A stretch of 64,000 nucleotides of DNA from Callorhinchus milii (Eukaryota), in contig NW_024704755.1 of NCBI RefSeq assembly GCF_018977255.1, forward strand, positions 15,686,001 through 15,750,000. Direction: 5' to 3'. Below, piece by piece: positions 2,731 to 49,493 of the stretch (its first letter is position 1; each line of letters begins with the position of its first letter). Under the pieces are notes generated by a model. It worked only from the letters and a program-made list of their open reading frames with translations, searched no databases and was not told the origin of the DNA. The position numbers and the translations under genes were made by a program.

Positions 2731-4739
2731 ATTGTTGGAAAGGTAAATGCAATTCAGACTTTGTTTAAAAGTAAACTGGCACAGAGGTTGCAGTGCCACC
2801 ATCTGACATTATAAGGCAAGTGAAGCACTTCCTCCATGAAACATTTTTTTCCATGACCAACTGACCAATAGTGAGAGTTATATTTTCCTTGGAAAAGTTG
2901 CATCATTTAAACCATTATTCAGTGATTCTGACATTAGTTTTTAAAAAGTACATTTGAAACTATACATTTAAAAATCAAAACAAATTCAACAACAATAACA
3001 AAATGCAATTATATAGCGCCTTTCACATATGGGTAACTAAATGACAAGTTGCCAGGAAGAGTAGCTGAGGCCAGGACACTCGACCTATTTAAAAAAACAG
3101 CTTGATACTGTGATGGGGAAATGGTACAATGGATGTTCTGGAAGAATGACATTGGATGGTCCAAAGGGTCAACTTCATCCATACCAATTTTGTGAACTTG
3201 TGGTAAGGTTTTGGTGCATTTTATAGGGAAATGGGTTGGACGCTGAAAAAGAGGAAGGAGGCGGTGGACATTGGTGGATCATGTAGGTTCTAAAGACACA
3301 AAGAGTTGGGTGAGACTCTTTGATAGAGAGTGTTGGATCCGGACTTTAGTCAGGTATATATAGAATGGAGATCTAATTTGATAAGCATTCCAAAGAAAAG
3401 CAACAATAGCATAAGCATTCAGGCCTGAATGGTTCATTTACAGGAAAGCGGCAGTGCAAACTTGATGGGCTGGATGGGCTCCAATTGTGCTTTGGAACTG
3501 CAATCTAAACTTCATTCTCCTCCGATTCACTCAAATCCCTTTTCAGTTTTACATGGTTTATCTTCAATTACACTGAATTAATGCACTGTATAATATATTT
3601 AACTGTTTACAAACAACAACAAATTAATGTGAAAATGTTTTTATTTAGAACAAACTTACATGATTAGAGAAATATCACAACCTTTTAAGTGATTCTTTGA
3701 GATATTTTTCAAGAAGGAATTACAATTAGTGTAACCACAGATGGATAAATAAAAATCTAACATGCATGATAAATATTTTATAGAGTACATTACTTCAGAA
3801 TCATCTCTATGACACACTTCATGCGAATTGGTAAAAGATAAATTTTAAAATTGTGCAATGAATGCAATGAAAACACATTTCAAATGGTTATATTATACAT
3901 AATGAATTTTTATTACATACCAAGTCAATCAACTTTCCAAATTTCTGAATTTGCTTATTTAGTCTATATTCCAAATTAATTACTAAACTATAATATCATT
4001 TTCCTTTTAAATATTTATGGGAAAGTTATCACAATAAGATATTTTGGTAACACGGAGTTCTGCGAACCCACCAGGCATAAGACCGGGTCTCCTGAAAGGA
4101 TTACACAGGATTGATTGAATTCCTTCGCCAGTATTTCATCTTGAAGAAAGTTTATCTCCAGGAACACCTCGTTGTAACTATCACTAAGATTAGTGCGAGA
4201 ATTTTAGTAGTCATGACAAACATTGCGTTTTTAATTTCATCTAAAAAAAACAACCATTATCATTGCTACCAATGGTATATCTGATTCTAATGAGTCATTA
4301 AAAATAGAAGCTTAGTTAGAAATAGTATTTAGACTAGACCACGTACATAATCCCCCAATATTAATGAGACACGACATGTCTCCTTCTCATATTTCACTGC
4401 AGGAAATTGTAACTCCTTGTTGCAGACAACCAGCAGATTCAGGGTTAATCTAAAGCGTGATCAGGATGGTGATGAATATTATCTTCCAATGGTCTGTAAC
4501 AGGGCTTATTTCCACAGGTATGTGTTCATACTGCAGCTTTGTTAAGCAGTTGTCTTGATGAAGCAGTTGTCTTGGCTTCTATAAAGAGTGCATTAAATCT
4601 GTTTTTGATTGGTGTATATCTATTTGAATTTCACTGCATTGTTTCTTTCAAATTGGTGTTTGGATTTATTCCTAAGAGTAGTTGGCAATACTTTGTAGAG
4701 TGACTCAACAGCCCAACTACACGACTATCCGAGGTTAAA

Positions 4740-5033
4740 GTCCTGTAGCTCAGTGGTTAGAGCACTTGCCTTTGCAAGCGAAACATCTGGGTTCAATTCC
4801 AGGCAGGGCGAAACCTTGGGCAAGTTTCCTTACTCCACACACCTAATAATAATCCCTCCCAAAAAAATATTAAATTGGTCATTTTCAATCCATGACTGTT
4901 TGTGGGACGCTGCTGTGCGCAATTGGCTGCCACATTTCGGCCACAAATATACAGTCAATTCACTTTACAGTCTACTCTGTGAAGCGCTTTGAAAAGTCGA
5001 GAAAACGTGAAAAGCGCTATATCAAATGCAAGG

Positions 5034-5065
<32 letters not shown>
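4740..5065 (+). mobile_element. tRNA-headed Deu-domain-type SINE inserted in the psi1 V exon
   Basis: A box tagctcagtgg, B box ggttcaattcc, core tgtttgtggga..gctgtgcgcaattggctgcc, (TTA)n tail, short target duplication aaag. Confidence 0.9.
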
Positions 5066-5066
<1 letters not shown>

Positions 5067-5082
5067 AAGCATCACCATCTAC

Positions 5083-5232
5083 CCCCTCCTCGCTCGCTCC
5101 CTCCCTTCCCTCCCCGCACCCTGACCATTTCCCCCCTGCGTGTGTCCTGACCCAACTGTCCAGTGCCTTGGGATATCCTCCCGACGTGAAAAGCGCTCTA
5201 TAAATGAAACCTTGTTGTTGTTGTTGTTGTTG
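5083..5232 (+). mobile_element. L2 LINE 3' end with (TTG)n tail inserted in the psi1 V exon
   Basis: cccaactgtccagtgccttggga..gcgctctataaatg..(ttg)n. Target duplication tac. Confidence 0.8.
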
Positions 5233-6916
5233 TACTGCACCATTCCCTACTTTGAAGATAATTCTTATATAAAGGTAAATTGACAGAAGCAGCGAGAGAG
5301 TGGATACCTACAAACAAGAGCAGATAACGGGAAATGGTTTGCAAGAAGCGATTCCTTCTAGCTTCCAGATTTGAATTACCAAGACTCTGGAGTTGATTTG
5401 GGGGCATTGGTGCTTCAGGGGAAAACAGCAAGAATGAAACTGGATCACATTTAATGGTGTGTGGTAACTGAGAATGCAACACAGAATGGGCCTGTAGCAA
5501 TATTCAAGTTATTGCGTAAAGAAATGTCGTCAAGAGTTATAATTAATGCTTTGAGAAAACCAAACGGTTCCAGCTATTCAAAGATTTGCCACTCATGTAA
5601 TGTTTCCCTACTTCCTACTTGCTATCTATTAATTCCAGGAACGGAATTCATTTAAATTTCTACATTTTATCAATACTATTTAATTACTATTTGAGTAATC
5701 AATACTATTGTATCAATACTATTTAAGATTTACAAGATTAAGGCTTTAATTAAATAATATTTTAAATAAGACAATGGTATTTAAGATATTTCAATGTAAT
5801 ACATTTTAAAACAAATTTGGAGTGGTTCAGCTTCAATGTTGCATATCTCCCTGCTGATATTTTATTCTGTTGTAGTTACTTTTCCTGAGTTTGCGGATAC
5901 TTTTTTTTAAAAATAAAAATTTGGGATTAAGTTAAGGATTTGTATGGTAAGAGCTTTGAAAACCAGGTGTTATTAACTTTTCAAAACATGGAAATGAACA
6001 CCACATCTTTATGCCCTCTATACTACCCATTAAATATATCAGCCATATTGTTGAGAGATCCTTCTGTTGGCCACAATTTCCCACATTCAAGCTTTGTCCA
6101 CCTCTTGAAAATAAAATGTATCTTCCCCCAGTTTCAATTTGTAACTATGAGATGATAGGGTTAATACTTTATTTACGTGCTCACGTAACAACAATTTAAA
6201 CTGTCCAATTAAGACAAGTTAGACGTTCTCTGCATTGAAATATAAAAAGATTTTCTTTTGTGGTAAAACGGAGAGGTAGTGAACGACACACAATGTGTGT
6301 CCTAAGCGCAAAATGCGCTTTATATGATGCATTTATTTACAACTTTACTAATTGCTTTGATATCTATTAACACCCTGCTGTCCATAGAGGAACAAATATA
6401 GCAAGTAATTCGCATCTCATGAAAAAAAGGTAATTTATTAAATACATAATCAAGAATCGAATGTGGCAATAAATACAAAACAGAATAAAATGTCTTCCTC
6501 ATAATGTATTCAGAACGGACTCTATGTGGAAGAGGCGCAGTCCATCCAGAGTGGGGGCTGTTTAAGTATATTATTAAGTAGATTCCAGAGATTGACAAAA
6601 TGCATAGTTACCTTTAAATACCTCCATCGACTTGACCCACTATACCTCTGCAATATCATTTACAACATACTCCACCCGCTCTGTCACTTCTTGCTTTGCT
6701 TCCACCCTCTCTAACTGCCCCCAACCCCATCTCTGACATCTTTCAACCACTCAGTCCTTACCTTCTGGAACTCTCTTTCAACATTGGTCTGTCCAATCTC
6801 TCCCTAACTTCAAAACTTGTCTAAAGACATCTCCTTGACTGCTTTTTAGTCGCTTCTCTCACCTCCTCTCCTTTCTCCTGCTCAAATTGGGTGGTTTCGA
6901 TCTTCCTTGGATTTAT

Positions 6917-7246: not shown

Positions 7247-8186
7247 TTAATTCGCTGTTGACCAATGAAATTTGGTCAAATTATTGTACATCTTACCCAT
7301 TGCATAGAATGTTTGGTCTCTCCAACAATTGTGAAAATATTAATTTATGTAACATGTTATTCTAAGAGTTTTCAAACGATTCTAAATATTTTTTGGCTTG
7401 ATTTATAGAGCACATAACCCACTAAGAATACTCCAGTACCACAACAAAATATCTTATTTTTACACTCTTTGTATGGAAACTTTCAAGTGGCTGCGTTCAG
7501 CAGACTGCAGCAGGAGGAACTTTGTTGGGAAAGAACTAACACAAAATTAACCCCAGTTGTTACACTTTTAAAAATGGACTTTCAGAAGTTACACTGAGAA
7601 CAGCTATCCTGTCGATTTGCGTGAGAATGTAGTTTAATAAAGTCATAGCAAACTTTGTAAATTCCAGATATTAATTTATCTTTTAATCTGTGGATTTTTA
7701 TAAACCTTCGGATCAGACGTTAAACAGAGGGCTCGCCTGCTGCCTCTTCAGATGGATTTTAAAGATCACATCAAAAAGAGAATAAAGTGTTTACCAGTTT
7801 CCGGGTCCACAATCCCCCAAATAAAATTGGTCATTCCCTTCATGGTTGTTTATGAGACATTGATGTGCGCGAATTGTATGCCACTTACTCCCAAAGAAAT
7901 ATATAGTCACTCAACTTTACAATGTATCCTGTGAAGCACTTTGAATCGTTCTCCTGCCATGAAAGATGCTATATGCAATGTAAAGGTTATTATTATTTTA
8001 CGTATGATAAGATGAATAATTGTAGGCATCCTTCAAGTAGGTAAAGTTTTGTTTCGGGAATGACAAAGTTGAATAGTTTATTGATTAATACACAAGAAAT
8101 CAATGTCATTACCTTAAATTCATTTTATCAACCCCTTGTAGCAGACCAGCAACAGTTTCAAAGTTGTCTCCGAAGTGATCCGAAAG

Positions 8187-8238
8187 ATGGCGAGTGTTGC
8201 ATTTCAGTATTTCACGCTCATGGGGATGCTTTCCACAG
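8187..8238 (+). pseudogene. Orphan leader exon L0 with dead splice donor (probable original 5' end of gene B)
   Basis: MASVAFQYFTLMGMLST followed by g|AT instead of g|GT. Preceded by the family 5'UTR motif cagaccagca. The downstream intron copy (~8970-9053) ends in a broken V acceptor (ctgat-g ttgttgacg). Confidence 0.8.
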
Positions 8239-8319
8239 ATAGGTTCCCAGTTTGATGAGAAGAAAGATAGACAAATCTTTTATGTATATAAGCTGAGTAT
8301 CAATCTTGCTTTAGCTTTA

Positions 8320-8957
8320 GGAGTCCTGTAGCTCAGTAGTCAGAGAACATGCCTCACAAGCGAGAAACCTGGGTTCATTTCCCAGCAGGGCAAAACCTTG
8401 GGCAAGTTTTCTTACTCAACCCGCCAGATAAAAATCCCTCAAGAAAAACAAACAATAATAATTTGATCACTCAATCCACAACTGTTTGTGGGACACTGCT
8501 GTGTTCAATAGGCTGCCACGTTTCACCCACAAAATATACAGTCAATTCACTATATGGTATATAATGTGAAGTGGAGTCCTGTAGCTCAATGGTTAGAACA
8601 CTCGCTTTGCAAGCGAGAGACCTGAGTTCAATTCCAGGCAGAGGGCGAAACCTTGGGCCAGTTTCCTTACTCCACACGCCTAATAATAATCCCTCCAAAA
8701 AAAAAACAATAATAAATTGGTCATTTTCAATCTACGACTGTTTGTGGGACATTGCTGTGCGCAATTGGCTGCCGCGTTCGCCCACAAATATACAGTCAAT
8801 TCACTTTAAAGTGTGTTCTGTGAAGCGCTTTGGGACGTCCTCCTGACGTGAAAAGCGCTATATCAAATGCAAGGATTATTATTATTATTATTATTAAGTG
8901 CTTTGATATGTCTAGAAGACGTGAAAAGCTCTATATCAAATGCATTATTATCATTAT
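8320..8957 (+). mobile_element. Older SINE with a younger SINE (8571-8895) nested inside it
   Basis: The outer copy is interrupted at gtgaagtg and resumes at 8896 (aagtgctttg...aaatgcattatt). Target duplication aagtg. Confidence 0.85.
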
Positions 8958-9141
8958 CTCATTACCTTTTGATTTATATTTCTCTGTATTCGTTTTCATC
9001 AGCTCTGTATTTTACTCAATCAGTGTTTGGATTAATTTCTGATGTTGTTGACGTCACTGCCTCACATTCACTTTAGCATCTGACACCCCTCATTACAGAC
9101 CAGCAGTGGGTTCAGGGTAATCTCAGACAGTGATCCGAACC

Positions 9142-12100
9142 ATGGCGAGTGTTGTGTTTTACTGTTTCTCTCTCGTGGGGATGCTTTCCACAGGTAAGCG
9201 CTCGGTTTGTCTGCAAATATAGTCGCAGTCGTATTCATTTTTATACTAAACCAAGTGCTCTGGGGCACTACCCTGCGTGAGAGGCGTTATATAAATCCAA
9301 ATTGTTGCAAACAAAGTTCCGTTGCTTTACTTGCATCTCTTTACCTCATGCTTTATATTTTCTCTGTATTCGTTTTCATCGGCTACATATTTTACTCAAT
9401 CAGTATTTGAATTTGTTTTGATAGTTGTTGACGGCACTTCGGTCCAAGTAACTCAACTCCCCAAACACACAACTGTAATCAAAGGTGAAAGCATCACCTT
9501 CTACTGTGCCATTTCCTACTTTGAAGAAAACTCACGTACAAAAGTATACTGGTGGAAGCATGGGGAGAGGGAGTACCTGCAAACACGGCCAGATGCCAGG
9601 AAAATATTTGATATTGAAAAAGGAGGAAGCGGCTTCTTTCAGCTCCTGGATGTGAATCTTCAGGACTCTGGAGTTTATCACTGTGCTCTGGCGTTGGAGG
9701 GAAAAATAGCAAAAAATGGAACTGGATCGAATTTAACTGTATGCGGTAAGTGTTAACCCTTCGCAGAACTGGATCATTGTTATCTTTACATATTACGCAA
9801 ATATATCTAACGCACTATAATCTTAAGAGAATCAAAACTAGACTGAGAACTGCAGGTGTGTATGACATCTACATTGGGAAATTGTGCAGTATCTGAAAAG
9901 GAATGATGTTTCCTGGTTACCTAATTCTGGAGAGCAGAGGTTTGTTGTGTCCCCTGGAGTTTAATCAGATAAAGCCACATACTTGCCAACTCCTTGAAAT
10001 TTGAAAGCACATTTGGCTTCCTGCAATGCTGTGCAGGTAGGAAAAGCCCGACCGGTACCGGTTTGTCTTGAGGGTTAAACAGCAGATGAGTGGCAAGATT
10101 CCCTGCCCCTGTGACTATCTGGGGATCCAGGACAGATCTGGATCATTGCTATCTTTACATATTACGCAAATATATCTAGTAAACTATCCTCTTAAGAGAA
10201 TCAAAACTAGACTGAGAACTACATGTGTGTATGTCATCTACACTAGGAAATTGTCCAGTATCTGATAACAATAATAATCCTTGCATTTGATATAGCACTT
10301 TTCACCTCTTCTAGATATCTCAAAGCATTTTACAGAATATACTGTTGACCGTATATTTTGTGGGCGAAACTCGGCAGCCAATTGCGCACAGCAGCGTGCC
10401 ACAAACAGTCTTGGATTGAATGACCAATGTTGTTCTTTTTCTTGAGGGGTTATTATCAGGCATGTGGAGTAAGGAAACTTCCCCAAGGTTTCGCCGTGCT
10501 GGGGATCGAAACCAGGTCGCTCGCTTGCGATGTGAAGGCTCTCACCATTGAGCTACAGGATTCCACAATTGGAAAGGAATGACGTTCCTAGTTACCTAAT
10601 TCTAGAAAGCATTGGTTGGCAAATGCCAAGGCTTGTGTCCCACTGGAATTTAATCAGATAAAGCTGTATACTTGTCAGCACTTGAAACTTGAAAGCACTG
10701 TCTGACAAGCTTCCTGTTGTTTATACAGGTAGGACAAGGCCCCAGTTTACTTATTTGATGTGCAGGGTTAAACAGAATCTGAGTGGGAAGAATACCTGCC
10801 CTATGACTGTCTGCCTCTAATCCCAGGCTGGCTGGTCTGTCATCAGCAATGCCCAGGAATTTTGCAGATCTGCCAATCTCAGGAACGGAACTACTGACAC
10901 AGAGGATTGACTGAGGTGCAACAGTCTGCTGCTAAACATGTCACAGTGGAGAAAGTTCAGCTGCAAGGAAACTCTGTTAACTCCGCACCCACCCACCCCC
11001 ACCCCTCATACCCTCCCGAAGAGGGTATAAACATGATAAAACATGCAAGTAACCAAACCAACATAAATCAAAGTTCATCAATATCCGTTAGGTGTGTACT
11101 GTAAGTAATTCGAATAGAACTGTCCAAATAACACAATTTAGAGTAGCGTAACATCTCTGGAATGTCCATGTATAGGTGGGAACCATGGAATTCGCAGTTA
11201 AATATGGATATTTTTAAGCAGGTTGTGCTGGTTTTTCGCATTGAGGCCAGCCAATCAGCTGACCTCCAAAAAAATTTGTGGAAGGGAATCCTTACTTTGG
11301 TGAAGACTGAAATAGTAAATAACAGCAGATCATATTTTAATATTTTAATGCCACTCGCACCAGCTTTTTGAATGAATAATGTTGTTTCATTACTTTTGGC
11401 AACTGTGATTGCTGGAGAGTAAAGAAAATGCTATTACCGAGTAAATACAAAATATAGAAATCAGATCAATAATAATAATAATCCTTGCATTTGATACAGC
11501 GCTTTTCATGTCGGGAGGATGTCCCAAAGCGCTTCACAGAACACACTGTAAAGTGAATTGACTGTATATTTGTGGGCGAACGCGGCAGCCAATTACGCTC
11601 AGCAATGTCCCACAAACAGTCGTGGATTGAAAATGACCAATTTATTATTGTTTTTGGATTTGGAGGGATTAGATCAAGTTGTCACAGAGAAATTAATCAG
11701 ATATAAATCGGAATTAAATTTTCCTCAACTGAACAGAAATGGTGTAATTCTGCTCCATTATCTAACCCACAGTTCCACCAACGCCACTGAAGATAATCCC
11801 AAGGTTTACTAAACGTAATGCATCGGTGTCTCTGACTCTTGTGTGTCAAACGGCTGAGTATTACCCGAAGAATCTCATCCTGACTTGGTATAACAGTGTC
11901 ACCGAAATTACAACAGGAATAAATACCACTGAACAGCAGAATCCAGGGGGATTGTATGGAACTTCCAGTTCTATGGAAGTGGCACAGCCCATCCTGAGGG
12001 GGGCTGTTTATACCTGTAAGGTGTCACACATCAGCCTCAAGGCTTCAGAAATTGCCGAATACAAGGTTCAACTTTCTGAACGTTCCGATGAAGGTAGCAT

Positions 12101-12863
12101 GCCAGAAATCCTACTGTTAATCTTAACTGAATTTTCACATGATTATTGCAATTTATCGTAAAGCTCTTGATATTGTATTGTATTACCCAATAGCCTACAG
12201 ACTTCAGATATTGCCAAATATATAGTTCGCCTTCCTTAAAAATGTACCGTACTTAACTTACCAGCAATCTTGTTGTCATCTACTGTGAATTTCAAAATGT
12301 TTGTCAGAATTAATAAAGATGTCATATCTAAATTTTTCTTAAAAAACTTCTACTGGAAGATATTTGAAAGTTATATATTGATTTACAAGTTATTTGCCTC
12401 AAACAATTTAAAATCTCACTAAATATAAAAAATCATCTGAGTTGCGCTCAGGCTGTCACAGTACCATAATAATCACCATCTCATTGTTTTAATAGTGACG
12501 GTATTTTCTACAAAAAAAAACCATTCAGTGGATTCTCCTTACATGAAATTGCAGGACATTGTATTTTTAATCTATAACTGTCTCAAAGATTTTTTAAGTT
12601 TCACGATTTGAAGCTTATAATAGAGCCTTTCATGTCATTCCTTAGAGTAGTCTAAACACTGCATTTCATTTCAAATTCACCATCAATAATGTACAGTCTT
12701 GTGAACCTGTTGTTACTTTGCAGGTTTAGGTGTCAACATCTACGGAATTTCCCGTTTTCCATTGAGCGTGTTGGTAATGATTCTTTTAGTGGTTATCATT
12801 GTGGACCATTTCAGAATCACCCTCTGTAAAGGTAAGACTTTCATTCACGTCACTCTTATGTAA
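9142..12863 (+). CDS. Gene B: V(J)-C1-TM SIRP-like receptor, activating type (TM Arg, no Tyr in tail), ~277 aa
   Basis: Exons 9142-9193, 9425-9745, 11773-12093, 12724-12863 (TM exon read through its donor at 12832). All splice sites GT-AG, phase 1, total 834 nt in frame. TM IYGISRFPLSVLVMILLVVIIV. The 3' end is inferred. Confidence 0.8.
9425..9745 (+). CDS. Gene B V-set exon with J-like G strand
   Basis: 321 nt. VTQLPK..ITFYC..KVYWWK..QDSGVYHC..KNGTGSNLTVC, flanked by tgatag and gtaagt. Confidence 0.92.
10266..10566 (-). mobile_element. SINE in the gene B V-C1 intron
   Basis: Head ..gagctacaggattccac, Deu-type core, tail ataataatccttgcattt. Confidence 0.85.
11470..11670 (-). mobile_element. 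5'-truncated SINE with 7-bp TSD (agatcaa); absent from the paralogous site in gene D
   Basis: agatcaa at 11463-11469 and 11671-11677. The D empty site reads tcagatcaagttgtc. Confidence 0.9.
11773..12093 (+). CDS. Gene B C1-set exon
   Basis: 321 nt. LTLVCQTAEYYPKNLILTW..YTCKVSHISL (C1 motifs FYP-like, W, CxVxH). Confidence 0.9.
12724..12863 (+). CDS. Gene B transmembrane exon (Arg) with short read-through tail
   Basis: Acceptor tactttgcag. GLGVNIYGISRFPLSVLVMILLVVIIVDHFRITLCK, then GKTFIHVTLM* if the donor at 12832 is not used. Confidence 0.75.
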
Positions 12864-13779
12864 TTGCCACCATTTAGTTTTTAATTTATTTTGTTTCTTT
12901 AATATCAAGAGATGTTACATATATTTACCATTACGTTTTACATTTCCAAATTTTATTACATCTGTTATGTTCAATTGGCAATTAATTTTCTGATTTAAAA
13001 TAGTACTTTGGAAACTTAAATATATTAAGATACAACCTAATTTTGATTCATGATGACATATGGTCAGTGAAGACAATCATGTGATTGAAAGATTTGCAAT
13101 ATTCACAATCCGTTGCGTCTTTATAGATGTTAGAAGAGAGAAATGAAGAGAGACCGAGTTCCACTGGTGCAAATTGACCGACTGCAGTTAAAATAGATCT
13201 GAGGTAGAAGCACAGTATATCTCCAAGTAGAGCCGACAAACAAAACGGATGATTAGTATGTATGAAACCAGGTCTTAAAATGTTCCTGTTTATCTCTAAA
13301 CATGAAATGCTTTCTATATGGATAGAAAAATATATACCCTCGAGATAACGTGTACATGTAAATGACACAGCTGTGCTACCTCACTGTTGCTATTTTTTAC
13401 AAACGTTCATTAAATGGAGTAATAAACACGAACATTGCTTTGTAAAAAATGATGTCATTTTCAGAAATTAAAACTAAATTGCATCAAATCTTTGTGCTTT
13501 GTGTTTCCATATGACTTCTGTGTAATCTAACAAGGAAAACAAATTACAATATATAAATTATCTGCTCACACACATCTGATTTTATTGATTTTATACAAGG
13601 TTCAGTACTATAAGATTCAGCTGCATAGAACTGAGTAGAACAGATCTCCCACAAAATTAACCTTGGTTATTGTAAACACCAAAGAAGGATCCTGCTGTTT
13701 GCACTGATAGTATGTTCCACATTGATCTGCGCAAGAGACAATGTAGTTTAATACACTAACAGTAACAGGACAAACAGAG

Positions 13780-13930
13780 CAACTGGCTTCGCAAATCCCT
13801 CCAGCCAAAACCTATGTCCTGGGCCCTGAGAGATCGAAGGCAAACGTCAGTCATAACGTCATATTTCATTTCAAACAACCACAAACACTTATTACAGACC
13901 AGCAATGGGTTCAGGTTTAGTATCGGACCT
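13780..13930 (+). promoter_or_regulatory. Orphan family promoter/5'UTR with no downstream leader
   Basis: Aligns by eye to the gene E promoter (caactg.ctt.gcaaa, gtcagtcat.ac, aaacaac..., cagaccagca) and to the D 5'UTR (gggttcagg). Truncated by a SINE at ~13950. Confidence 0.55.
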
Positions 13931-13949
13931 TGATGAGGCTCTTGATGTG

Positions 13950-17652: not shown

Positions 17653-17974
17653 GTGGAGTCCTGTAGCTCAGTGGTTAGAGCACTCGCTTTGCAAGCAAGA
17701 GACCCGAGTTCAATTCCAGGCAGAGAGCGAAACCTTGGGCAAGTTTCCTTACTCCACACACCTAATAATAATCCCTCCAAAACCAAAAACAATAATAAAT
17801 TCGTCATTTTCAATCTACGACTGTTTGTGGGACATTGCTGTGCGCAATTGGCTGCCGCGTTCGCCCACAAATATGCAGTCAATTCACTTTACAGTGTCTT
17901 CTGTGAAGCGCTTTGGGACGTCCTCCCGACGTGAAAAGCGCTATATCAAATGCAAGGATTATTATTATTATTAT
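17653..17974 (+). mobile_element. Full-length young SINE
   Basis: Matches the consensus from gtggagtcctgtagc to the (TTA)n tail. Confidence 0.9.
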
Positions 17975-22700: not shown

Positions 22701-24884
22701 AGTGAGTTTACGTTTCAGGTCGATGACCTATTGTCAGACAGATACTTTTTGGTGTCAGTCAGGTTCAATGTTGTACGGGGAAATTTCTAAAATTGCCCTG
22801 CACAGCATTAAACCTGCGTCCTCTTGTTCTGCTGCCCTGGTGCACTCGAAAATATTGTTCTGTGTTTACTATCTCAATCTCACTTAAAATTTCGATAGTT
22901 CTATATGTTCCCCGGTGTTTATGGAGATCTGAACTCATGGCAATAACCAGCTTCTTGTTTGCGTTGTTTATTTTCTGCCTCACACTATTTGACAATATGA
23001 ACACTTCAAATAACATTTCTAGATGTCCTTCAGCTTCCCCCTTGGCAAGTTATAATACATCAATGGAATCCATGTATTCCCTATTGTACTTCCTGTTTGC
23101 AGAAATCTGTTGGGTTTTCAGCCATTTGAAACTTGCTAAAGTTATATACCAATTCGGCTGTATGCTTGTTTTGAGTTGGAAATGCACTCTTAATCCCAAA
23201 AGAAAGCTATGAACTATTTCTCCAAACGCACCATATTGGTTACAAATATTTATTCAATTAACATTGAGGAATATATATATAAACCTCCTTGTAGAGCAGG
23301 CAAAATATATACATTGTTAACTTATCCACATTGACAGTGAAAGTGTCAATGCCAATCATTGCACCGTTGATTATTGAATTGTGCCTTTTGATCGCAAAAA
23401 AAACTGCCTCAAACGCAAATTTACTGCAAATTTGTATTATATTCCAGTTGTCGAAGAACAAGGCAGTCCTAGAATAAATAAGAACATAAATGACATTTAT
23501 CGGCTACATCAGCAATGCACACAGTGAATTTAGGTTACTTGGTTACAACATGTTTGACCAAATCAGTTACTAAGGTCTGAATCATCAAAGAACTAGGTTG
23601 CAAAACTTGACCCAATTTTCATCAGCCACACGATTAATAAGCCAAGTAAGTATAGACCCTTGTGGGCAAACATTAACAAATGATTGAAATCAAACAACGC
23701 TGATTGGTTAAAGGTAGGTCTTGCATAATAAATCTAAAGGAGCCCTTTGATGGAATAACTGAGTGAACAGATAAGGGGAATGCTGCAACGGATTTTCAGA
23801 ATTTTTTCACCTCTGTTAAAGCCTTTGCAAAATGTATTTAAAAGCAAAGCACACGGTATTAAAGGAAAGGTGGCAGTATGGACATAATGTTGGTTATAGG
23901 CTTGGAAACAGAGTGAGAGCACATGGTTGTTTTTGGAATGGATAGATATAGATAGTGGTGTCCTGCAGGTGTCCAAGTTAAGACTTCTACTTTTTATATA
24001 AATTATCACGAATCTGGTCCAATTTTCCCAGTGACACAAAAATAGGGAGCGTCTCTCACAGTGATGATTACTAGTAATTTAATGCATGTAGTGTTTCGCC
24101 ATTTTATTCGGATTCGTGATTTAAACGTCATTCCTCCCTCTCCATCTACACGTAAATCTTGTTCGGAATATTTTTCATTCACTAATGCAAAAAACTTGCA
24201 GATTTGTTTACTTTATCTTGAAAGGATCTGATCAAATGGTCAGGCTATTGCCGGAATCATCTAGTTTATTTTCTTAACCGTTCACATACATACAGGACAA
24301 AGGTGAAAGTGGATTGGTTTATGGCTAATATTGCAATTTTGTTGTTTTTTGAAGCTAATGACATTTAAACTGAATGTACCTGAAAAACGGTCAGTGTTAC
24401 TGCAGCCAAGGAGACTTCCCCACTGCTTTGCTTCTATGAATTATTTATTATTTATTATTTAAAGTCGGTAAAGCTAACAGAAAATGCTGGAAATATTGAA
24501 GCTAGTTTAAATAACAAAAATAGTGCCATTGTTGAGTTTATCACCTCCAACAATGTAGTACACCGAGCACTGCAAAGGCACATCAACATAGACTATATAC
24601 GTTCCAAGTCCTAGCATGCAGCTTGAACTCGGAATCTGACGGATATTTGCCTGCCTGAAAAACATGTTTAAATATGATAATTAAACTCCATAACGTGCCG
24701 CCAGTTCATGCTAGACTTGAACACAATGCAACTTTAATTCTGTTGAAAGATCCTGCCTTACTGCTGTCTTTACTTTGCAGTTATTGCTGTCGAGGTCTTG
24801 GTTTCCCTGTTCACATTGAGCGTATTAGTAATACTTATTTTGATGGTAATCATCGTAGACTATTGTAGATTTCAACCATTTTAA
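19785..24884 (+). CDS. Gene C: V(J)-C1-TM receptor with essentially no cytoplasmic tail, ~263 aa
   Basis: Exons 19785-19839, 20154-20474, 21885-22196, 24781-24884 (stop TAA just before the donor at 24887). 792 nt in frame. TM VLVSLFTLSVLVILILMVIIV followed by DYCRFQPF*. Confidence 0.82.
20154..20474 (+). CDS. Gene C V-set exon
   Basis: 321 nt. VAQQPK..ITFYC..KVYWWK..QDSGLYYC..GNGSGSHLTVC|gtaagt. Confidence 0.92.
21325..21582 (+). mobile_element. L2 3' fragment
   Basis: ..ggcctttggaattctctc..gggcactgcacaaatgtaagttgttgttg. Confidence 0.6.
21885..22196 (+). CDS. Gene C C1-set exon
   Basis: 312 nt. LTLVCKTAAFYPENLQFNWYENG..YTCGVLHLSL. Confidence 0.9.
22760..24040. mobile_element. Two decayed CR1-clade fragments in opposite orientation (gene C intron)
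   Basis: 22760-23220 (-) reads QYFRVHQGSRTRGRRF. 23560-24040 (+) resembles the CR1 RT region around ..ggtgtcctgcagg. Boundaries approximate. Confidence 0.5.
24781..24884 (+). CDS. Gene C transmembrane exon ending in a stop
   Basis: Acceptor tactttgcag as in gene B. 21-residue hydrophobic run, homologous to the B TM exon. Confidence 0.78.
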
Positions 24885-25120
24885 AGGTAAGACATTCATT
24901 ACTTCCTTCAGAAATATTGTTCTAATTTTAAAGCATTTAGAGAGGAGAATAACAGTTGGATCTGAGAATGGTAAATTCATAAATATCGTTTTTAAAAAAA
25001 ATCAGATTCATTCTTTTACCACAAGTGAAGTTGTACTGCAGAATTGTAGCAGTTGTGATCGTGACATAAAGCCTCTGCAGATTTGAAGATGGATTGCTTC
25101 TTTAATCGAAAGCAATGCGG

Positions 25121-32669: not shown

Positions 32670-32998
32670 GTGGAGTCCTGTAGCTCAATGGTTAGAGCAC
32701 TCGCTTTGCAAGCAAGAGACCTGAGTTCAATTCCAGGCAGAGGGCGAAACCTTGGGCAAGTTTCCTTACTCCACACAGAGCCTAATAATAATCCCTCCAA
32801 AAACCAAAAAACAATAATAAATTGGTCATTTTCAATCTATGACTGTTTGTGGGACATTGCTGTGCGCAATTGGCTGCCGCGTTCGCCCACAAATATACAG
32901 TCAATTCACTTTACAGTGTGTTCTGTAAAGCGCTTTGGGACGTCCTCCCGATGTGAAAAGCGCTATATCAAATGCAAGGATTATTATTATTATTATTA
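32670..32998 (+). mobile_element. Full-length young SINE
   Basis: Matches the consensus. Confidence 0.9.
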
Positions 32999-36610: not shown

Positions 36611-37949
36611 ACAACCTTAGGTTAATTTTATCTGCCACCAATTACCTCTTTCGCCCACTTTCTCTTGCCTCCTTCACCATCATCTCAACTTCCAACTGCC
36701 AGGAGTGAAAGGCTTCTGTTTTCTTTAGTCATCGGAGTAGCACATGCAGAAAACCTCTCAGTGCTTAAGAGTATCCAAAACGGGCTGAGAATTCCTTCCA
36801 TGTCACCTACACCTGGAAATTCCAATGCCTGTAATGGCATGTTCACTCTCTCCCCGGATGATTTTAGTTTGCAGGGTTAATAGGAGATGATTGAGGAGAA
36901 TCACTGCTCAAAGTGACTGGTCTGCCCTTCCAAATTCTCCTGGTGAGACAATCTGACTGCTTTGACATCAGTAGTTTCCTATAATACCTCAGACCCGTCT
37001 GCCTGAGGAAAGGGACTTCTGAGAGCACCACAGATAATCAACTCATTGCCAACATTCCGCTGCCAAACATGCCACCTTGGAGCCAATTCAGCTTCAATGA
37101 GATCCCCTCTTGCCTCCCACAAGGATAATAGTCATTATTTGGACATTTGACAGATGGAGGTTTGAAAACTCAAAAGGTGGATGACAAGTATCAGGAACTT
37201 CCTGAAAGTTTCATGGTGAGGAGCAAAACTCAGCATGGGTTGTGTAAGAGCATTGTCCTCATCTTTCTGTTCACATCTCAGATACACATCCTTTCACATT
37301 GAGCGATGGTCCACATATTGGAGGTGTTGTGCTTTAGCAGCAGCTGTTTCCAGTTGGTGTATTCCAAGCCCAAGACATAGGAACCTGTGTTTTTGATTCT
37401 GGAGTCCATGTAATGTCTTCCATCAGCTAACGACCCAATCCTCAGAATTTCCTCATCAGATATATTACAGACACCTGCCTTTGGCATGGTGGAATGACCA
37501 TTGCAGAAAGTCTCGTAACTTGCCAGCCACCTTGATGCTCCAGAGGTTTACCTTCCTTCCTTCCTCCCCCTGCCTTGGCACCGGGATCCGTTACTGTGAA
37601 GTGCTCTGAGACACCGTCCGGCGTGGAGGGTGCTATATAAATCCAAGTTGTTGTTGTCGTTGTTTATGCCCAATGCCACATATCTGAATTACTCAGCTCT
37701 AGCACTCATAAATGGGCAAGACGAAACCTTCAGATGCACTTTAAGGACGTCAATTAGGAAAGCTGGTTGGAGATATGACTTAGATACCATAAGATTAACC
37801 TGTATTCGGACCTTCCTATCTCTCAAGATCGATAAAAATACCCAGAATTGCACTTCTCAGCATGGTCCGAAGGACAATGTTCAAGCATAAAAAGGTGGGG
37901 TTCCTGGAGTCGAGAAATTACCCTGAGCTCCGCATCTCCTCTTGTAGCA

Positions 37950-38850: not shown

Positions 38851-40121
38851 ATTGCTTATATCCCCGAGAGTTCTGCTGGTATTTTGATCATTTTCATTCA
38901 CAAACCATCAACCTGGCCTGACAACTGTCAACCTGGCCAAGCAGGGCAGACAAAAGATAAAAGATTCATCTGAAACATATTCTTTCTGGTTGGAAAAAAT
39001 CTACTTTTAAACCGCAGTACACGATGGTCATCCAATAAATCAGAGGGAGCTCAAAAACGTTTCCCTTTCACCCACAGCTAAAGGTGATGATTGCATTATA
39101 TTGATATTCTCAACTGAGCAATGATAACACTATATACTCTCCTTCCGATTTATAATCTTCTGTTTCCCTGCAGTTAGGAAATTTCCATCAAGGTAACCCA
39201 ATCACTGATGAACAATTCTTCTTTGCATTGTGTAGAAAAACTCAATGCATTTGTGAATATCCCAGAAATCGTTACACTGAGTTCTACTTCGAGACAAACA
39301 TTTTGTTGCATGTGAAATATGCTCACAGGACCTACATTCCTATTTCACTTATCATTTGCGCTCCAAATTGTATTATTATTGATCAAAATGAGAATCTTTA
39401 CTACATATTAAGTTTACACAAAAAAGGCTTCTTTTAAAGCAGCAACTCGTTTCGGTTTGAACATGATTTACAATCTCAATTCTAGAAAAATCTAGGAAGA
39501 TAATTCCAAATTTCAAATGAATGACATTTCTTCAGCTGTGAGACAAATGAGAGAAATTTAAATCGGGATTAAAACTATTACGTTTTAGCAATATACAATA
39601 AACAAGCAGCTGAAAAAATAAAGTAAAAATCGGATTTGGTCCATAAATTCCTAATTCTCCTTTAACATTTTAATCGTTGTCGAATATTTTGATTCTTCAG
39701 GCGTCCAATAATTGTAAAGTATTAATTTGTTATAATATGTTATTCTGAACGTTTTCAAATAATTAAACAAAAATAGGATTAGTTTGATGTACGAAACTAA
39801 GAATGCTTCAATAGCACAATAAAATACCTAATTCATACGCTCTTTCTAAAAGGTCCCTTCAAATGGTTCCATTCGGCAGCTACAGTTGGAGGAAACTGTT
39901 GGAACAGATCTCCTGCGATATGGGTGTCAAACCAAACTCGGTGGTCACAATCATGAACATAACTTTCAGACGTTGCAATGAGGAACTATCCTGTAGATTA
40001 TCACGAGATAATAGTTCAAACAGTAATAACGGATGTATTGTAAATTTCAGATACAATTCACCTTTCATCTGTATCGACAGTAAGTAAGTTTTAGACGCTC
40101 CTCAAGTAGACAATAACCTTT

Positions 40122-40175: not shown

Positions 40176-40265
40176 TAAACGTCACTGCCTCACATTCATT
40201 TTTAGCATCTTGCACCCCTCAGTACAGACCAGCAGTGGGTTCAGGATAATCGCAGACAGTGATCC

Positions 40266-43200
40266 ATGGCGAGTGTTGTGTTTTACTGTTTCTCTCTCGT
40301 GGGGATGCTTTCCACAGGTAGGTATTTGGTTGAATTAAATAGATACTCGCAGTCGTTTTCATTTTTATACTGAACCAAGTGCTCTGGGGCACTACCCTGC
40401 GTGAGAGGCGTTATATAAATCCAAATTGTTGCAAACAAAGTTTTGTTGCTTTACTTGCATCTTTACCTCGTGCTTTAAATTTTCTCTGTATTCATTTTCA
40501 TCGGCTACATATTTTACTCAATCAGTGTTTGAATTTGTTTTGATAGTTGTTGACGGCATTTCGGTCCAAGTAACTCAACTCCCCAAACACACAACTGTAA
40601 TCAAAGGTGAAAGCATCACCTTCTATTGTGCCATTTCCTACTTTGAAGAAAACTCACGTACAAAAGTATACTGGTGGAAGCATGGGGAGAGGGAGTACCT
40701 GCAAACACGGCCAGATGCCAGGAAAATATTTGATATTGAAAAAGGAGGAAGCGGCTTCTTTCAGCTCCTGGATGTGAATCTTCAGGACTCTGGAGTTTAT
40801 CACTGCGCTCTGGCGTTGGAGGGAAAAATAGCAAAAAATGGAACTGGATCGAATTTAACTGTATGCGGTAAGTGTTAACCCTTCGCAGAACTGGATCATT
40901 GTTATCTTTACATATTACGCAAATATATCTAACGCACTATAATCTTAAGAGAATCAAAACTAGACTGAGAACTGCAGGTGTGTATGACATCTACATTGGG
41001 AAATTGTGCAGTATCTGAAAAGGAATGATGTTTCCTGGTTACCTAATTCTGGAGAGCAGAGGTTTGTTGTGTCCCCTGGAGTTTAATCAGATTTTAAAGC
41101 CACATACTTGCCAACCCCTTGAAATTTGAAAGCACAGTTTGGCTTCCTGCAATGCTGTGCAGGTAGGAAAAGCCCGACCGGTACCGGTTTGTCTTGAGGG
41201 TTAAACAGCAGATGAGTGGCAAGATTCCCACTCACCCCTTACTGCCACCCCCGCTCCAAAGAGGGTAACTATTTTGGCACTATAAACATGATAAACATGC
41301 AAGTAATCAATCCAAATCAAAGTACATTAATATCCGTTAGGTGTACACTGAAAGCAATTCGAACACAACTAGCCAAGTCACACAATTTAGAGTTCTTAAC
41401 ATCTCTGGAATGTCCATGGATAGGTGGGAACCAAGGAATTCACAGTTAAATATGAATACTTTTAAGCAGTTTGTGATGGGTTTCCACATTGATGACCGAA
41501 ACAGAATCCTTACTTTGGTGAAGATTGTCAATAGTAAATAGCAGTCGACTGTGTTTTAATGCCGCCTGCACCAGGTTTTTGCGATGAAGTTATTTACTTA
41601 AATGTGAACTACATTTATAAATAGTAATGTCGACTCATTACTTTTGGCAACTGCGATTGCTGGAGAGTAAAGAAAATGTTATTACGAGTAATTCATTAAA
41701 TACAAAATGTAGAAATCAGATCAAGTTGTCACAGAGAAATTAATCAGATATAAATCGGAATTAAATTTTCCTCAACTGAATAGAAATGGTGTAATTCTGC
41801 TCCATTATCTAACCCACAGTTCCACCAACACCACTGAAGATAATCCCAAGGTTTACTAAACGTAATGCATCGGTGTCTCTGACTCTTGTGTGTCAAACGG
41901 CTGAGTATTACCCGAAGAATCTCATCCTGACTTGGTATAACAGTGTCACCGAAATTACAACAGGAATAAATACCACTGAACAGCAGAATCCAGGGGATTG
42001 TATGTAACTTCCAGTTCTATGGAAGTGGCACAGCCCATCCTGAGGGGGGCTGTTTATACCTGTAAGGTGTCACACATCAGCCTCAAGGCTTCAGAAATTG
42101 CCGAATACAAGGTTCAACTTCCTGAACATTCTGAAAAAGGTAGCATGCCAGAAATCCTACTGTTAATTATAAGTGTCTTTTTCCATGATTAGTTAATTTA
42201 TCGCAAAGCTAATTGCTAAATATTTTTTAAAAATCAACTTTTAGTAAAAGGTATTAGAAATGTAGGCGTATGCGCATTATCTTCCTCGAAAAGTAATGCA
42301 AGAAGACTCATTAAAATATGAAAACTTGAAATCATCAATTTAATAACAGAATCTCTATTCTGGTGAAACCTGGAGTTAATTAAATTATACATTAGTTAAC
42401 AGGCCACAAACATCGTGTTGAGAAAATAAATGAACGTCATGCACCGTAATGTATCGCTTCTTTTTTGTATCTTGCCATTTTACCAGGGTTTGACTATTGG
42501 ATCGTTGGATATGCAGTGGCTGCACTGATTTTTCTAGTAGTTTTAATTATTATTGGGAAGCGATGCAAATGGATGAAATGGAGAGGTAAGAAATATCTGT
42601 TTTTATTGAAATTAAGTGTATTATTTCCATTTTAATTCAATGTTTCAATGAGTAAATGAGACATCCCCGGATTATGCAATGGGAAGAGAGGTTTGAAGAC
42701 TAAATGTCTGTGCAGTCCACTAATGATTATTAAATATTAATCAATTTCAGAATTTGTATTCATTCTAGTCCACACATTATTTTAAATTTCTGTCATAGAA
42801 ATTTAATACATATTTCATTAATTTAGTTTCATTAATTTTAGGCTCCCATAAAGAAATTAATGGATCGCACCGTTCTGGAGAACAGGTAACTTTATATAAC
42901 TTGTCTCAGCAGGTTTGTCACCTTGCAGAGATTGATGGAATAAATAGAGATTATTCCTTATAGATTTTATAACATTTTAACTCATTCTCCTTCGAGCATT
43001 TATACGTCCTCACTTTATAATTTGCGCACAATTATTGAGCACCACGTATAATATAGTGCATTTGCTAGCAGTATATATTATCAACTATAAGTATTGTAAA
43101 ATATTCTCAAGTGATTTTTAAAATATTTTAAACTAGGCAGCTGAAGTTCACTTGTTCATCGCAGTGTTACACTCAGTGTTTACGCAGTAGTGTGAAGTCC

Positions 43201-49166: not shown

Positions 49167-49493
49167 ATAATAATAATAATAATAATCCTTGCATTTGATA
49201 TAGCGCTTTTCACGTCGGGAGGACATCCCAAAGCGCTTCACAGAATATACTGTAAAGTGAGTTGACTGTATATTTGTGGGCGAACGCGGCAGCCAATTGC
49301 GCACAGCAATGTCCCACAAACAGTCATAGATTGAAAATGACCAATTTAATTATTATTTTTGTTTTTTGGAGGGATTATTATTAGGTGTGTGGAGTAAGGA
49401 AACTTGCCCAAGGTTTCGCCCTGTGCCTGGAATTGAACTCAGGTCTCTCGCTTGCAAAGCGAGTGCTCTAACCACTGAGCTACAGGACTCCAC
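49167..49493 (-). mobile_element. Full-length young SINE
   Basis: Matches the consensus on the minus strand. Confidence 0.9.

What the first reader, a model, noticed from the sequence alone, without database searches (positions are those of the whole stretch)
8187..10140. Gene B looks chimeric: its own V exon was replaced by a ~1.1-kb leader+V cassette from a D-like inhibitory gene
Seen in sequence, in order: (1) an orphan leader L0 with a GT>AT donor; (2) a family intron ending in a broken acceptor and the first 9 nt of a V exon (ttgttgacg, 9045-9053); (3) an abrupt switch at 9051 into sequence matching D's promoter from 40179 (microhomology acg-cact between the V start gacggcact and the promoter aacgtcact); (4) a D-like 5'UTR, leader, V exon and post-V intron to ~10103-10133; (5) a second, more diverged copy of the post-V intron starting at ~10136, exactly where B's original V exon would have ended. 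Inference: a non-allelic cassette transfer gave an activating TM the ligand-binding domain of an inhibitory receptor, which would be a fossil record of how a paired receptor is born. Two successive unequal-crossover deletions are an alternative route to the same structure.
Basis: partly seen in the sequence, partly recalled or inferred. Interest (0 to 1): 0.85.

Follow-up and report, generated by a model that had tools for sequence, protein, structure and literature searches.

The report
Mosaic activating receptor gene, repeatedly overwritten
In an elephant-shark cluster of immune receptor genes, an activating-type gene has had its ligand-binding exons overwritten several times by sequence from its inhibitory partner, leaving dead exon fragments behind; this is a new and unusually legible example of a known way in which paired immune receptors stay matched.

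Summary
Gene B has an orphan leader L0 (8187-8237, donor AT), a relic intron with a lost acceptor, and 9 nt of a V exon. At 9051 it switches abruptly into 1081 bp colinear with gene D's core promoter, leader, V exon and post-V intron. An older copy of that intron restarts at about 10132.

The window is Callorhinchus milii. B and D are V(J)-C1 Ig receptors. B has an Arg in its TM and a short tail; D (LOC103185890) has ITIM/ITSM exons.

The interpretation needs three corrections.
- **Layered identity.** B-D mismatch falls into four classes: 0.7% (V and C1 exons), about 4% (promoter, leader intron), about 17% (the "original" intron) and about 34% (5' flank, C1 relic).
- **C1 was overwritten too.**
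- **Not a birth.** L0's 5' flank is homologous to D's, so B and D were already paralogues from flank to C1. This is repeated re-homogenisation of an existing pair.

Best mechanism: paralogue-templated break repair with non-homologous ends (inferred). The main rival is tandem duplications followed by conversion. No reads, transcripts or outgroup loci could be reached. This is a new variant of a known kind, of moderate interest.

The parts
7316..7691 (+). Native 5' flank of gene B, homologous to the 5' flank of D (39700-40072); oldest layer, p = 0.315
   Evidence: nhmmer E 3e-24 in both directions; alignment; distance
8075..8186 (+). Relic promoter and 5'UTR (P0) upstream of L0
   Evidence: nhmmer versus the D promoter, E 7e-15; its homology extends 35 nt further upstream than the cassette's; alignment A1
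8187..8237 (+). Orphan leader exon L0; the donor at 8238-8239 is AT
   Evidence: tblastn 12/17 to the live leader; sequence and ORF
8238..9044 (+). Relic leader-V intron i0 with two SINE insertions (8320-8551, 8571-8896); 3' end 8956-9044; acceptor AG lost
   Evidence: Self-blast; junction print-out
9045..9053 (+). First 9 nt of the old V exon (V0). Junction J1 joins V+9 to promoter -90, with ACG microhomology at 9051-9053. TGACGTCA lies across the junction
9051..9141 (+). D-lineage core promoter and 5'UTR. It begins at the GTCACT box, which is conserved among the paralogues; p = 0.07 versus D
9142..9193 (+). Live leader exon L (identical to D's), donor GT
9194..9424 (+). Leader-V intron: divergent patch 9194-9250 (p = 0.28), 9251-9372 (p = 0.042), and from 9373 the 0.7% tract
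9425..9745 (+). V(J) exon; 3 nt and 1 aa different from D's V
   Evidence: Pfam V-set
9746..10131 (+). First, D-like copy of the post-V intron (positions +1 to about +386). The last 28 nt are absent from D. Junction J2 lies at about 10131/10132
10132..11772 (+). Older intron copy I', restarting at about +17 and running to the C1 acceptor (p = 0.10-0.21 versus D). It contains SINE 10265-10566, a dispersed repeat at about 10824-10975, and SINE 11468-11671 with the direct repeat AGATCAA
11773..12093 (+). C1 exon. 11672-12074 shows 0.7% mismatch versus D; from 12075 the mismatch is 17%
   Evidence: Pfam C1-set
12094..12165 (+). 72 nt of D-homologous intron after C1, ending at junction J3 (C1+72 joined to C1 about -100; GCT microhomology)
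12166..12404 (+). Relic: a decayed copy of the last ~100 nt of a C1 exon plus ~150 nt of its downstream intron (= D 42052-42291); p = 0.374. It shares with B and D a 9-nt stretch that C and E lack
   Evidence: nhmmer E 2e-10 versus D and 1.7e-4 versus B's own C1; alignment; distance
12724..12831 (+). TM exon of B (GLGVNIYGISRFPLSVLVMILLVVIIVDHFRITLCK), with Arg in the outer third of the hydrophobic stretch. It is homologous to the TM exon of gene C (24763-24900), not to D's
40179..41229 (+). D counterpart of the cassette: core promoter, leader 40266-40317, V 40547-40867, and post-V intron up to D's own ~185-bp deletion
41719..42291 (+). D counterpart of the C1 tract and of the C1 relic. The C1 exon is 41820-42139, with a G5-to-G4 frameshift at about 41992-41995 in this assembly

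Best explanation
Gene B is an activating-type V(J)-C1 Ig receptor gene of Callorhinchus milii, with an Arg in its TM and a short tail. It is an old paralogue of the inhibitory gene D (ITIM/ITSM tail).

The part of B that encodes the ectodomain has been overwritten by D-lineage sequence at least three times.
- **Oldest overwrite (about 17% layer).** It brought in an intron and C1 segment and ended non-homologously 72 nt past C1. The last ~100 nt of the previous C1 exon were left behind it as a relic (junction J3).
A 1081-bp piece running from the conserved promoter box to intron position +386 replaced about 330 bp (V0 from nt 10 to intron +17). Because the piece overshot the gap on both sides, it duplicated the promoter, leader and leader intron on the left (J1) and about 370 bp of intron on the right (J2). 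The now redundant L0 then lost its donor and acceptor.
- **Youngest exchange (0.7%).** Ordinary homologous gene conversion over the V and C1 exons.

The proposed mechanism for the junction-forming events is repair of a break or gap in B by DNA synthesis templated on the paralogue (SDSA or MMBIR type). Invasion was by microhomology (ACG at J1) and the far end was closed by end-joining.

The net effect is that an activating and an inhibitory receptor keep nearly the same ligand-binding domain (1 aa difference in V).

Shown: the anatomy, the layers, the junctions, the intact reading frames and the motifs. Inferred: that J1 and J2 arose in one step, the repair mechanism, the expression of B, and its activating function.
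For: - **Anatomy and junctions:**
- **Four divergence classes against the same partner D.** Mismatch is 8/1133 (0.7%), 11/258 (4.3%), 165/952 (17.3%) and 201/594 (33.8%). Adjacent classes differ with Fisher p from 1e-4 to 3e-13.
- **Each duplicated segment has one D-near and one D-far copy.**
  - Leader region: p about 0.04 versus 0.25.
  - Intron: under 0.01 versus 0.10-0.21.
  - C1 tail: 0.167 versus 0.374, p = 3e-4.
- **D-likeness runs right up to J1.** The first 19 nt after the junction are identical to D, whereas L0's version differs at 4 of 19. That leaves too little flanking homology for an ordinary conversion tract to have ended there.
- **One event accounts for three things:** J1, J2, and the D-like block that lies exactly between them. 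The old-side edges of J1 and J2 (V+9 and intron +17) bracket a single short deletion of about 330 bp.
- **All three junctions are small backward jumps** (385, 369 and about 173 bp) and all lie in B. C, D and E have none in their 5' or ectodomain parts.
- **L0 is in the native position.** Its flank is homologous to D's flank.
- **B reads open** through L, V, C1 and TM with canonical splice sites.
- **Domains and motifs:**
  - V-set and C1-set domains.
  - D's tail carries LTYAAL, TEYAKV and TEYAEV.
  - B has no ITIM exon before the next promoter relic.
- **Precedent.** Repeated conversion of the ligand-binding exons of paired receptors is documented for Siglec-11/16 (PMC5701461), Siglec-5/14 (PMC4042635), CEACAMs (PMC2832619, PMC5112662) and KIR2DS4 (PMC2768862).
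Against: - The final sequence is the same whether the junctions formed together with the transfer, or earlier as local tandem duplications that later limited conversion tracts. Nothing in one genome copy separates these.
- The layer boundaries were set after looking at the data, so the p-values are optimistic. Short segments (about 90-130 nt) have wide intervals.
- The 28% patch at 9194-9250 inside the cassette is unexplained.
- The donor is not present-day D, so a lost or unsampled paralogue, or later changes in D, must be assumed.
- No transcript or protein of B exists in the searched databases.
- No reads were available to verify the assembly.
- The left end of the oldest overwrite was not found.
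Confidence: 0.5

Rival explanations
1. Three independent small tandem duplications arose inside B:
- promoter -90 to V+9;
- intron +17 to +386;
- C1 -100 to C1+72.

Each arose by slippage or unequal exchange at short repeats. Later, ordinary homologous conversions with D overwrote the copy colinear with D. They stopped at the duplication junctions because homology ends there.
For: - Every junction is exactly of tandem-duplication type: a backward jump with short microhomology. The ACGgCACT and ACGtCACT repeats lie 385 bp apart within one gene.
- Conversion between B and D certainly occurs (the 0.7% tracts).
- It visibly stops at heterologies: the SINE at 11671 and D's deletion at 10103.
- No exotic mechanism is needed.
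Against: - It needs three duplications plus at least two conversions that each ran to within about 20 nt of a junction, where no flanking homology is left for resolution.
- All three duplications would have to fall in B and none in C, D or E.
- Two independent duplication ends would have to bracket the V exon within 9 and 17 nt by chance.
Confidence: 0.3
2. B is what remains of three or four neighbouring paralogues after successive large deletions fused them head to tail. This is the reader's 'two successive unequal-crossover deletions', extended to include J3.
For: The cluster is littered with gene fragments:
- an orphan 5' flank and promoter at 13628-13934;
- a leader plus pseudo-V at 4364-5462;
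- an inverted leader plus pseudo-V at 35926-35467.
Against: - Genes lie 11-20 kb apart, yet each junction joins points only 173-385 bp apart in gene coordinates. For non-homologous deletions that is roughly a 0.05 chance each (my estimate).
- True unequal crossing-over would be in register and leave no coordinate jump.
- The result keeps exactly one intact copy of every exon, in frame.
Confidence: 0.07
3. Assembly artefact: reads of B and D, or of two haplotypes, were mis-joined, creating the apparent chimera.
For: - Only a single assembly is available (GCA_018977255.1).
- That assembly differs from the older one by a 1-nt homopolymer length in D's C1 exon, so small errors or polymorphisms exist here.
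Against: - Mis-joins between repeats occur at homologous positions in near-identical sequence. Here all three junctions are at non-homologous positions.
- The cassette differs from D by 4-8% over its first 320 bp. It carries a CCGAA and a 28-nt tail that D lacks, so it cannot be D reads misplaced.
- The duplicated copies are 10-37% diverged from each other.
Confidence: 0.05

Closest known systems
Siglec-11/Siglec-16 and Siglec-5/Siglec-14 (primates): paired inhibitory and activating receptors kept alike by repeated gene conversion (PMC5701461, PMC4042635)
   Same: - An inhibitory (ITIM) gene and an activating-type (charged TM, short tail) gene lie in one cluster.
- The 5' part, including the ligand-binding exon, is nearly identical; the TM and tail exons are unrelated.
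- Several conversion events of different ages are visible.
- One partner may be non-functional in some genomes (compare SIGLEC16P with D's frameshift in this assembly).
   Different: - The domain family differs: V(J)-C1 here, not V-C2 sialic-acid lectins.
- The host is a holocephalan.
- Two of the events here ended non-homologously and left a duplicated promoter, leader, intron copy and a C1 relic. As far as I know, such relics are not part of the Siglec descriptions.
- Ligand, expression and adaptor are untested here.
CEACAM paired receptors in mammals and Xenopus (PMC2832619, PMC5112662) and KIR2DS4/KIR3DL2 conversion (PMC2768862)
   Same: Exon-scale exchange of the ligand-binding Ig domain between activating and inhibitory paralogues within a tandem cluster, with birth-and-death debris around them.
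   Different: Those cases were inferred mainly from exon trees and homologous tracts. Here the evidence is structural: junctions and nested relics within one gene, in a much older vertebrate lineage.
SIRP alpha/beta family (V-C1-C1 myeloid paired receptors; structure 2wng, PMC2785349)
   Same: - V domain with a J-like G-x-G motif (NGTGSNLTV) followed by a C1-set domain.
- Inhibitory and activating members exist.
- SIRP alpha and SIRP gamma are among the best full-length PDB matches (2wng E 1e-12, 4i2x E 1e-10).
- Automated names of the shark relatives are 'SIRP beta-1-like' or 'tapasin-related-like'.
   Different: - There is only one C1 domain (V-C1, not V-C1-C1).
- Sequence similarity is no better than to antibody chains.
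- Orthology to SIRPs is not shown.
Aborted SDSA / microhomology-mediated templated insertion during double-strand-break repair (established from Drosophila gap-repair and MMBIR/FoSTeS work; from my own knowledge, not checked here)
   Same: A stretch copied from a homologous or homeologous template is inserted at a break. The junctions use 0-3 nt of microhomology, and sequence is duplicated where synthesis overshot the gap.
   Different: That mechanism is known from experimental systems and human structural variants. Its use here is an inference from the end product only.

Membership tests
Paired activating/inhibitory Ig receptors | Two clustered genes with near-identical ectodomain exons but unrelated TM and cytoplasmic exons | tested here: met
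   V exons differ at 3 of 321 nt (1 aa). C1 differs by 3 substitutions plus 1 indel over 11672-12074. Colinear homology ends at 12165/42210, and the relic's homology ends at 12404/42291. The TM exons are not homologous to each other.
Paired activating/inhibitory Ig receptors | The inhibitory member carries ITIM/ITSM motifs | tested here: met
   D's tail exons at 43586-44953 encode LTYAAL, TEYAKV and TEYAEV. The full 392-aa product is XP_007902823.1.
Paired activating/inhibitory Ig receptors | The activating member has a charged TM residue, a short tail and no ITIM | tested here: met
   The B TM exon reads IYGISRFPLSVLVMILLVVIIVD. After the TM only 8 residues (HFRITLCK) lie in the exon, or 19 residues before a stop if the last donor is unused. 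There is no ITIM exon hit between 12.8 and 19.7 kb.
Paired activating/inhibitory Ig receptors | The activating member signals through an ITAM adaptor, and both members bind the same ligand in the same cells | not testable with these tools
   There are no expression, binding or adaptor data. No B protein or transcript is in the databases.
Homologous (ectopic) gene conversion | A tract of sharply higher identity inside a less similar homologous background, with both ends in homologous sequence | tested here: met
   This holds for the youngest layer only. 9373-10103 and 11672-12074 show 0.7% mismatch against 4-17% on either side.
Homologous (ectopic) gene conversion | No change in the order or copy number of sequence at the tract ends | tested here: not met
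   This fails for the cassette and for the older C1 overwrite. J1, J2 and J3 are non-homologous backward jumps that duplicate 385, 369 and about 173 bp.
SIRP family | V-C1-C1 ectodomain | tested here: not met
   Only one V-set and one C1-set domain are present, and there are four coding exons: L, V, C1 and TM.
SIRP family | Specific sequence relationship to SIRPs above other V-C1 proteins | tested here: inconclusive
   SIRP alpha scores E 1e-12, within the same range as antibody chains and UrIg2.

The most novel reading that the evidence does not exclude
B is a palimpsest of at least three successive overwrites of an activating receptor's ectodomain exons by its inhibitory partner's lineage. 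Two of them were made in one step each, by paralogue-templated break repair with non-homologous ends. This would mean that concerted evolution of paired receptors was already at work in the deepest-branching living jawed vertebrates. It would also mean that it can proceed by an error-prone 'patch' route that carries a promoter and leader along with the binding domain.
Probability: 0.4. Interest if true: 0.55.

Novelty: new variant of a known kind. Interest (0 to 1): 0.42.

Why it matters
Activating and inhibitory receptor pairs are thought to arise and stay matched under pathogen pressure. The evidence for this is mostly exon trees and smooth conversion tracts in mammals.

This locus offers something different:
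- a physical record of junctions and dated relics inside one gene;
- a holocephalan host, which extends the phenomenon to the base of the jawed vertebrates;
- a hint that imprecise templated repair, not only tidy homologous conversion, can move a ligand-binding exon together with its promoter and leader.

It also gives annotators a concrete warning. B is absent from the protein sets searched, probably because of its double leader. D is truncated in the current RefSeq model because of a 1-nt homopolymer difference.

Tried and rejected
- **A fourth relic.** nhmmer stretched the intron-copy alignment back to 9696/10069, suggesting that the tail of the first intron copy (10060-10132) is a relic of a V 3' end. 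Smith-Waterman against shuffles gives p about 0.2 for B, I' and D alike, so this was rejected as chance.
- **The segment missing from D.** I asked whether the ~185-bp segment absent from D is a transposon insertion shared by both B intron copies, which would have made the first copy native to B. The repeat does occur elsewhere (36949-37104, 54580-54725 inverted, 4053-4173). But D retains the sequence matching its right end, so D has a deletion and the test is uninformative.
- **Evidence that B is expressed or annotated.** Two protein searches found only D-derived models and one odd 100-aa model.
- **The older assembly.** Look-ups of XP_007902823.1 and A0A4W3H1P0 returned nothing. XP_007902823.2 only returns the same assembly as the window.
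- **Literature on this cluster.** Nothing specific was found.
- **tRNA genes.** ARAGORN finds none in the SINE heads.
- **Separating one-step patch from duplication-then-conversion.** I tried divergence triplets (copy 1, copy 2, D). Both models predict the same distances, so this is not decisive.
Full report
**What the window is.** The best database match of the spliced V+C1 product is a Callorhinchus milii protein at 97% identity (A0A4W3HMH6). More distant relatives occur in sharks, automatically named 'SIRP beta-1-like', 'tapasin-related-like' and similar. Gene D is LOC103185890 on MU249845.1 of GCA_018977255.1.

On the + strand the window holds a tandem cluster of V(J)-C1 Ig receptor genes:
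- a leader plus pseudo-V at 4364-5462;
- gene B;
- an orphan 5' flank and promoter at 13628-13934;
- gene C (V 20156, C1 21884, TM 24781);
- an inverted leader plus pseudo-V at 35926-35467;
- gene D (L 40266, V 40547, C1 41820, TM 42486, ITIM/ITSM exons 43586-44953);
- gene E (V 54110, C1 55681, TM about 56346, ITIM exon 59571).

Pfam finds one V-set and one C1-set domain. SIRP alpha and SIRP gamma are among the best full-length PDB matches, but they score no better than antibody chains.

**The observation.**
- L0 (8187-8237) is 12/17 identical to the live leader and is followed by AT instead of GT.
- 8956-9058 matches the 3' end of the leader-V intron plus the V start at 84.8%. The acceptor AG has been lost.
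- At 9051 the sequence switches to D's promoter: 9051-10103 = 40179-41229, 95.9%, E = 0.
- The junction TTGTTGACG|TCACTGCC sits on an ACG shared by both parental types.
- A second intron copy restarts at about 10132, equivalent to intron position +17.
- B's live exons are L 9142-9193, V 9425-9745, C1 11773-12093 and TM 12724-12831. All are open with canonical splice sites.
- The double leader is specific to B. C, D and E show no local duplication of their 5' or ectodomain parts.

**Finding 1: the match to D is layered.** Mismatch against D falls into four classes:

| Class | Mismatch | Where |
|---|---|---|
| Youngest | 0.7% (8/1133) | 9373-10103 (intron 3' end, V, first intron copy) and 11672-12074 (C1) |
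| Second | 4.3% (11/258) | cassette promoter, leader and mid-intron, with an unexplained 28% patch at 9194-9250 |
| Third | 17.3% (165/952) | i0 3' end, second intron copy I', the rest of the intron, and the C1 tail 12075-12165 |
| Oldest | 33.8% (201/594) | 5' flank and C1 relic |

Adjacent classes differ with Fisher p from 1e-4 to 3e-13. The boundaries were chosen after inspecting the data, so these p-values are optimistic.

**Finding 2: the C1 exon was overwritten as well.** Colinear B-D homology ends at 12165/42210, 72 nt past C1. What follows (12166-12404) is a decayed second copy of the last ~100 nt of a C1 exon plus ~150 nt of its intron.
- It is homologous to D 42052-42291 (nhmmer E 2e-10) and to B's own C1.
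- It shares a 9-nt stretch with B and D that C and E lack.
- The junction J3 uses GCT microhomology.

**Finding 3: L0 is native, and B and D were already a pair.** The flank upstream of L0 (7316-7691) is homologous to D's upstream flank (39700-40072). This is reciprocal in nhmmer and low-copy. B and D therefore share ancestry from the 5' flank to about 150 bp beyond C1. Only the TM and tail parts differ. B's TM exon is homologous to gene C's (12706-12845 = 24763-24900, E 1e-12). The cassette re-matched an existing pair. It did not create one.

**Finding 4: present-day D is not the literal donor.**
- B keeps CCGAA before the ATG, as do L0 and the outgroup paralogues. D has lost it.
- B keeps 10104-10131, which aligns to the second intron copy but falls within a ~185-bp deletion in D.

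**Finding 5: where the cassette starts.** Its left end coincides with the first promoter element conserved among the paralogues, the GTCACT box. The cassette therefore carries the whole conserved core promoter.

**Mechanism.** All three junctions are short backward jumps in gene coordinates (385, 369 and about 173 bp), all in B. In every duplicated pair the copy next to the live exon is the D-near one.

I favour repair of a break or gap in B by synthesis templated on the paralogue. Entry was by microhomology and closure by end-joining, so that synthesis overshooting the gap produced the duplications. This explains four things in a single event:
- J1, J2, and the D-like block lying exactly between them;
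- the fact that the old edges (V+9, intron +17) bracket one ~330-bp deletion;
- D-likeness running to within 19 nt of J1;
- the same pattern at J3 from an earlier event.

The mechanism itself is established knowledge from gap-repair and MMBIR studies, cited from memory. Applying it here is inference.

**Rivals.**
- *Three local tandem duplications followed by homologous conversions limited by the junction heterologies.* This yields the same sequence and cannot be excluded from one genome. It needs more events, needs conversion tracts that reach the junctions, and needs all duplications to fall in B.
- *Large deletions in an array.* This fits poorly, because the genes are 11-20 kb apart while the coordinate offsets are under 400 bp.
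- *Mis-assembly.* This is unlikely, because the junctions are at non-homologous positions and the copies are 4-37% diverged. No reads could be checked.

**Function.**
- *B.* It has an Arg in the outer third of its TM stretch (IYGISRFPLSVLVMILLVVIIVD), a tail of 8-19 residues, and no ITIM exon.
- *D.* It has LTYAAL, TEYAKV and TEYAEV motifs.
- *The family in sharks.* Related sharks have both kinds of receptor. One Scyliorhinus form has an R in its TM and a short tail. Heptranchias forms have several ITIM-like motifs.

The activating role of B, its adaptor and its expression are all inferred. No B product is in the databases.

**Comparison with what is known.** This works like the Siglec-11/16, Siglec-5/14, CEACAM and KIR2DS4 cases, where ligand-binding exons of paired receptors are repeatedly homogenised (PMC5701461, PMC4042635, PMC2832619, PMC5112662, PMC2768862).

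It differs in three ways:
- the domain family is V(J)-C1;
- the host is a holocephalan;
- two of the events have non-homologous ends that duplicated a promoter, a leader, an intron piece and an exon end.

It is not a SIRP by architecture, since it has one C1 domain rather than two.

**Verdict.** This is a new variant of a known kind, of moderate interest (0.42). It is limited by resting on a single assembly, with no transcripts and no outgroup loci.

Noticed in passing
41982-42011 (D C1 exon; G-run at about 41992-41995): D's C1 exon has GGGG where B has GGGGG. This causes a frameshift and a stop in this assembly. RefSeq XP_007902823.1 (older assembly) reads through as an intact 392-aa ITIM receptor, while XP_007902823.2 (this assembly) is cut to 201 aa starting at MEVAQ. 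It is either a homopolymer error or a real null allele of the inhibitory partner.
   Followed up: partly
13628-13934: An orphan copy of the family 5' flank (= 7517-7650) and core promoter/5'UTR lies about 800 bp after B's TM exon. It runs into another SINE-like element (from about 13945) where the leader should be, and no V or C1 follows before gene C's own promoter at about 19715.
   Followed up: partly
9048-9055: Junction J1 creates a perfect palindrome TGACGTCA (the consensus cAMP-response element) from V0's TTGACG and the promoter's TCACT. D has only AAACGTCA at this site. The other paralogues have GTCA-type half sites. It could be chance or could matter for B's promoter.
   Followed up: no
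9194-9250 versus 40318-40374: A 57-nt patch just after the leader donor differs from D at 16 positions (28%), inside an otherwise 0-7% diverged block. L0's intron start is unalignable here too. The cause is unknown.
   Followed up: no
4364-4525 and 5233-5462; 35926-35467 (minus strand): Two further dead gene starts, each a leader-like exon plus a pseudo-V with stop codons. The pseudo-V at 5233 shares the YFE(D/E)NS motif with the B/D V type.
   Followed up: no
24781-24886 (gene C TM exon): Gene C's TM exon is homologous to B's. It has Leu where B has Arg, a Glu a few residues earlier, and an in-frame stop just before the donor. It is therefore a short-tailed form without the basic residue.
   Followed up: partly
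8320-8551, 8571-8896, 10265-10566, 11468-11671, and about 20 more across the window: An abundant SINE family of about 320 bp with a tRNA-like head (ARAGORN calls no tRNA) and an ATT-rich tail. A young subfamily is about 95% identical between copies (8571-8896, 17653-17974, 32670-32998, 49167-49494, 56800-57122). The copy at 11468-11671 has the direct repeat AGATCAA and marks the left edge of the 0.7% C1 tract.
   Followed up: partly
43592-43704, 44123-44310, 44816-45021: D's cytoplasmic ITIM/ITSM exons are three diverged tandem copies of one unit. A similar ITIM/ITSM exon at 174-290 must belong to a gene upstream of the window.
   Followed up: no
12530-12574, and protein P0015 (A0A4W3H1P0, old assembly): An Ensembl model on the older assembly joins three pieces:
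- a C1 5' half only 57-67% identical to any C1 in this window;
- a stretch identical to the B/D C1 3' part;
- a translation of B's C1-TM intron (14/15 residues).

It may be an unconverted version of B's C1, another paralogue, or a junk model.
   Followed up: partly
10797-10984; 36949-37104; 54580-54725 (minus strand); 4053-4173: A low-copy dispersed repeat of about 150 bp lies in B's old intron copy. D has a ~185-bp deletion that removes most of it.
   Followed up: partly
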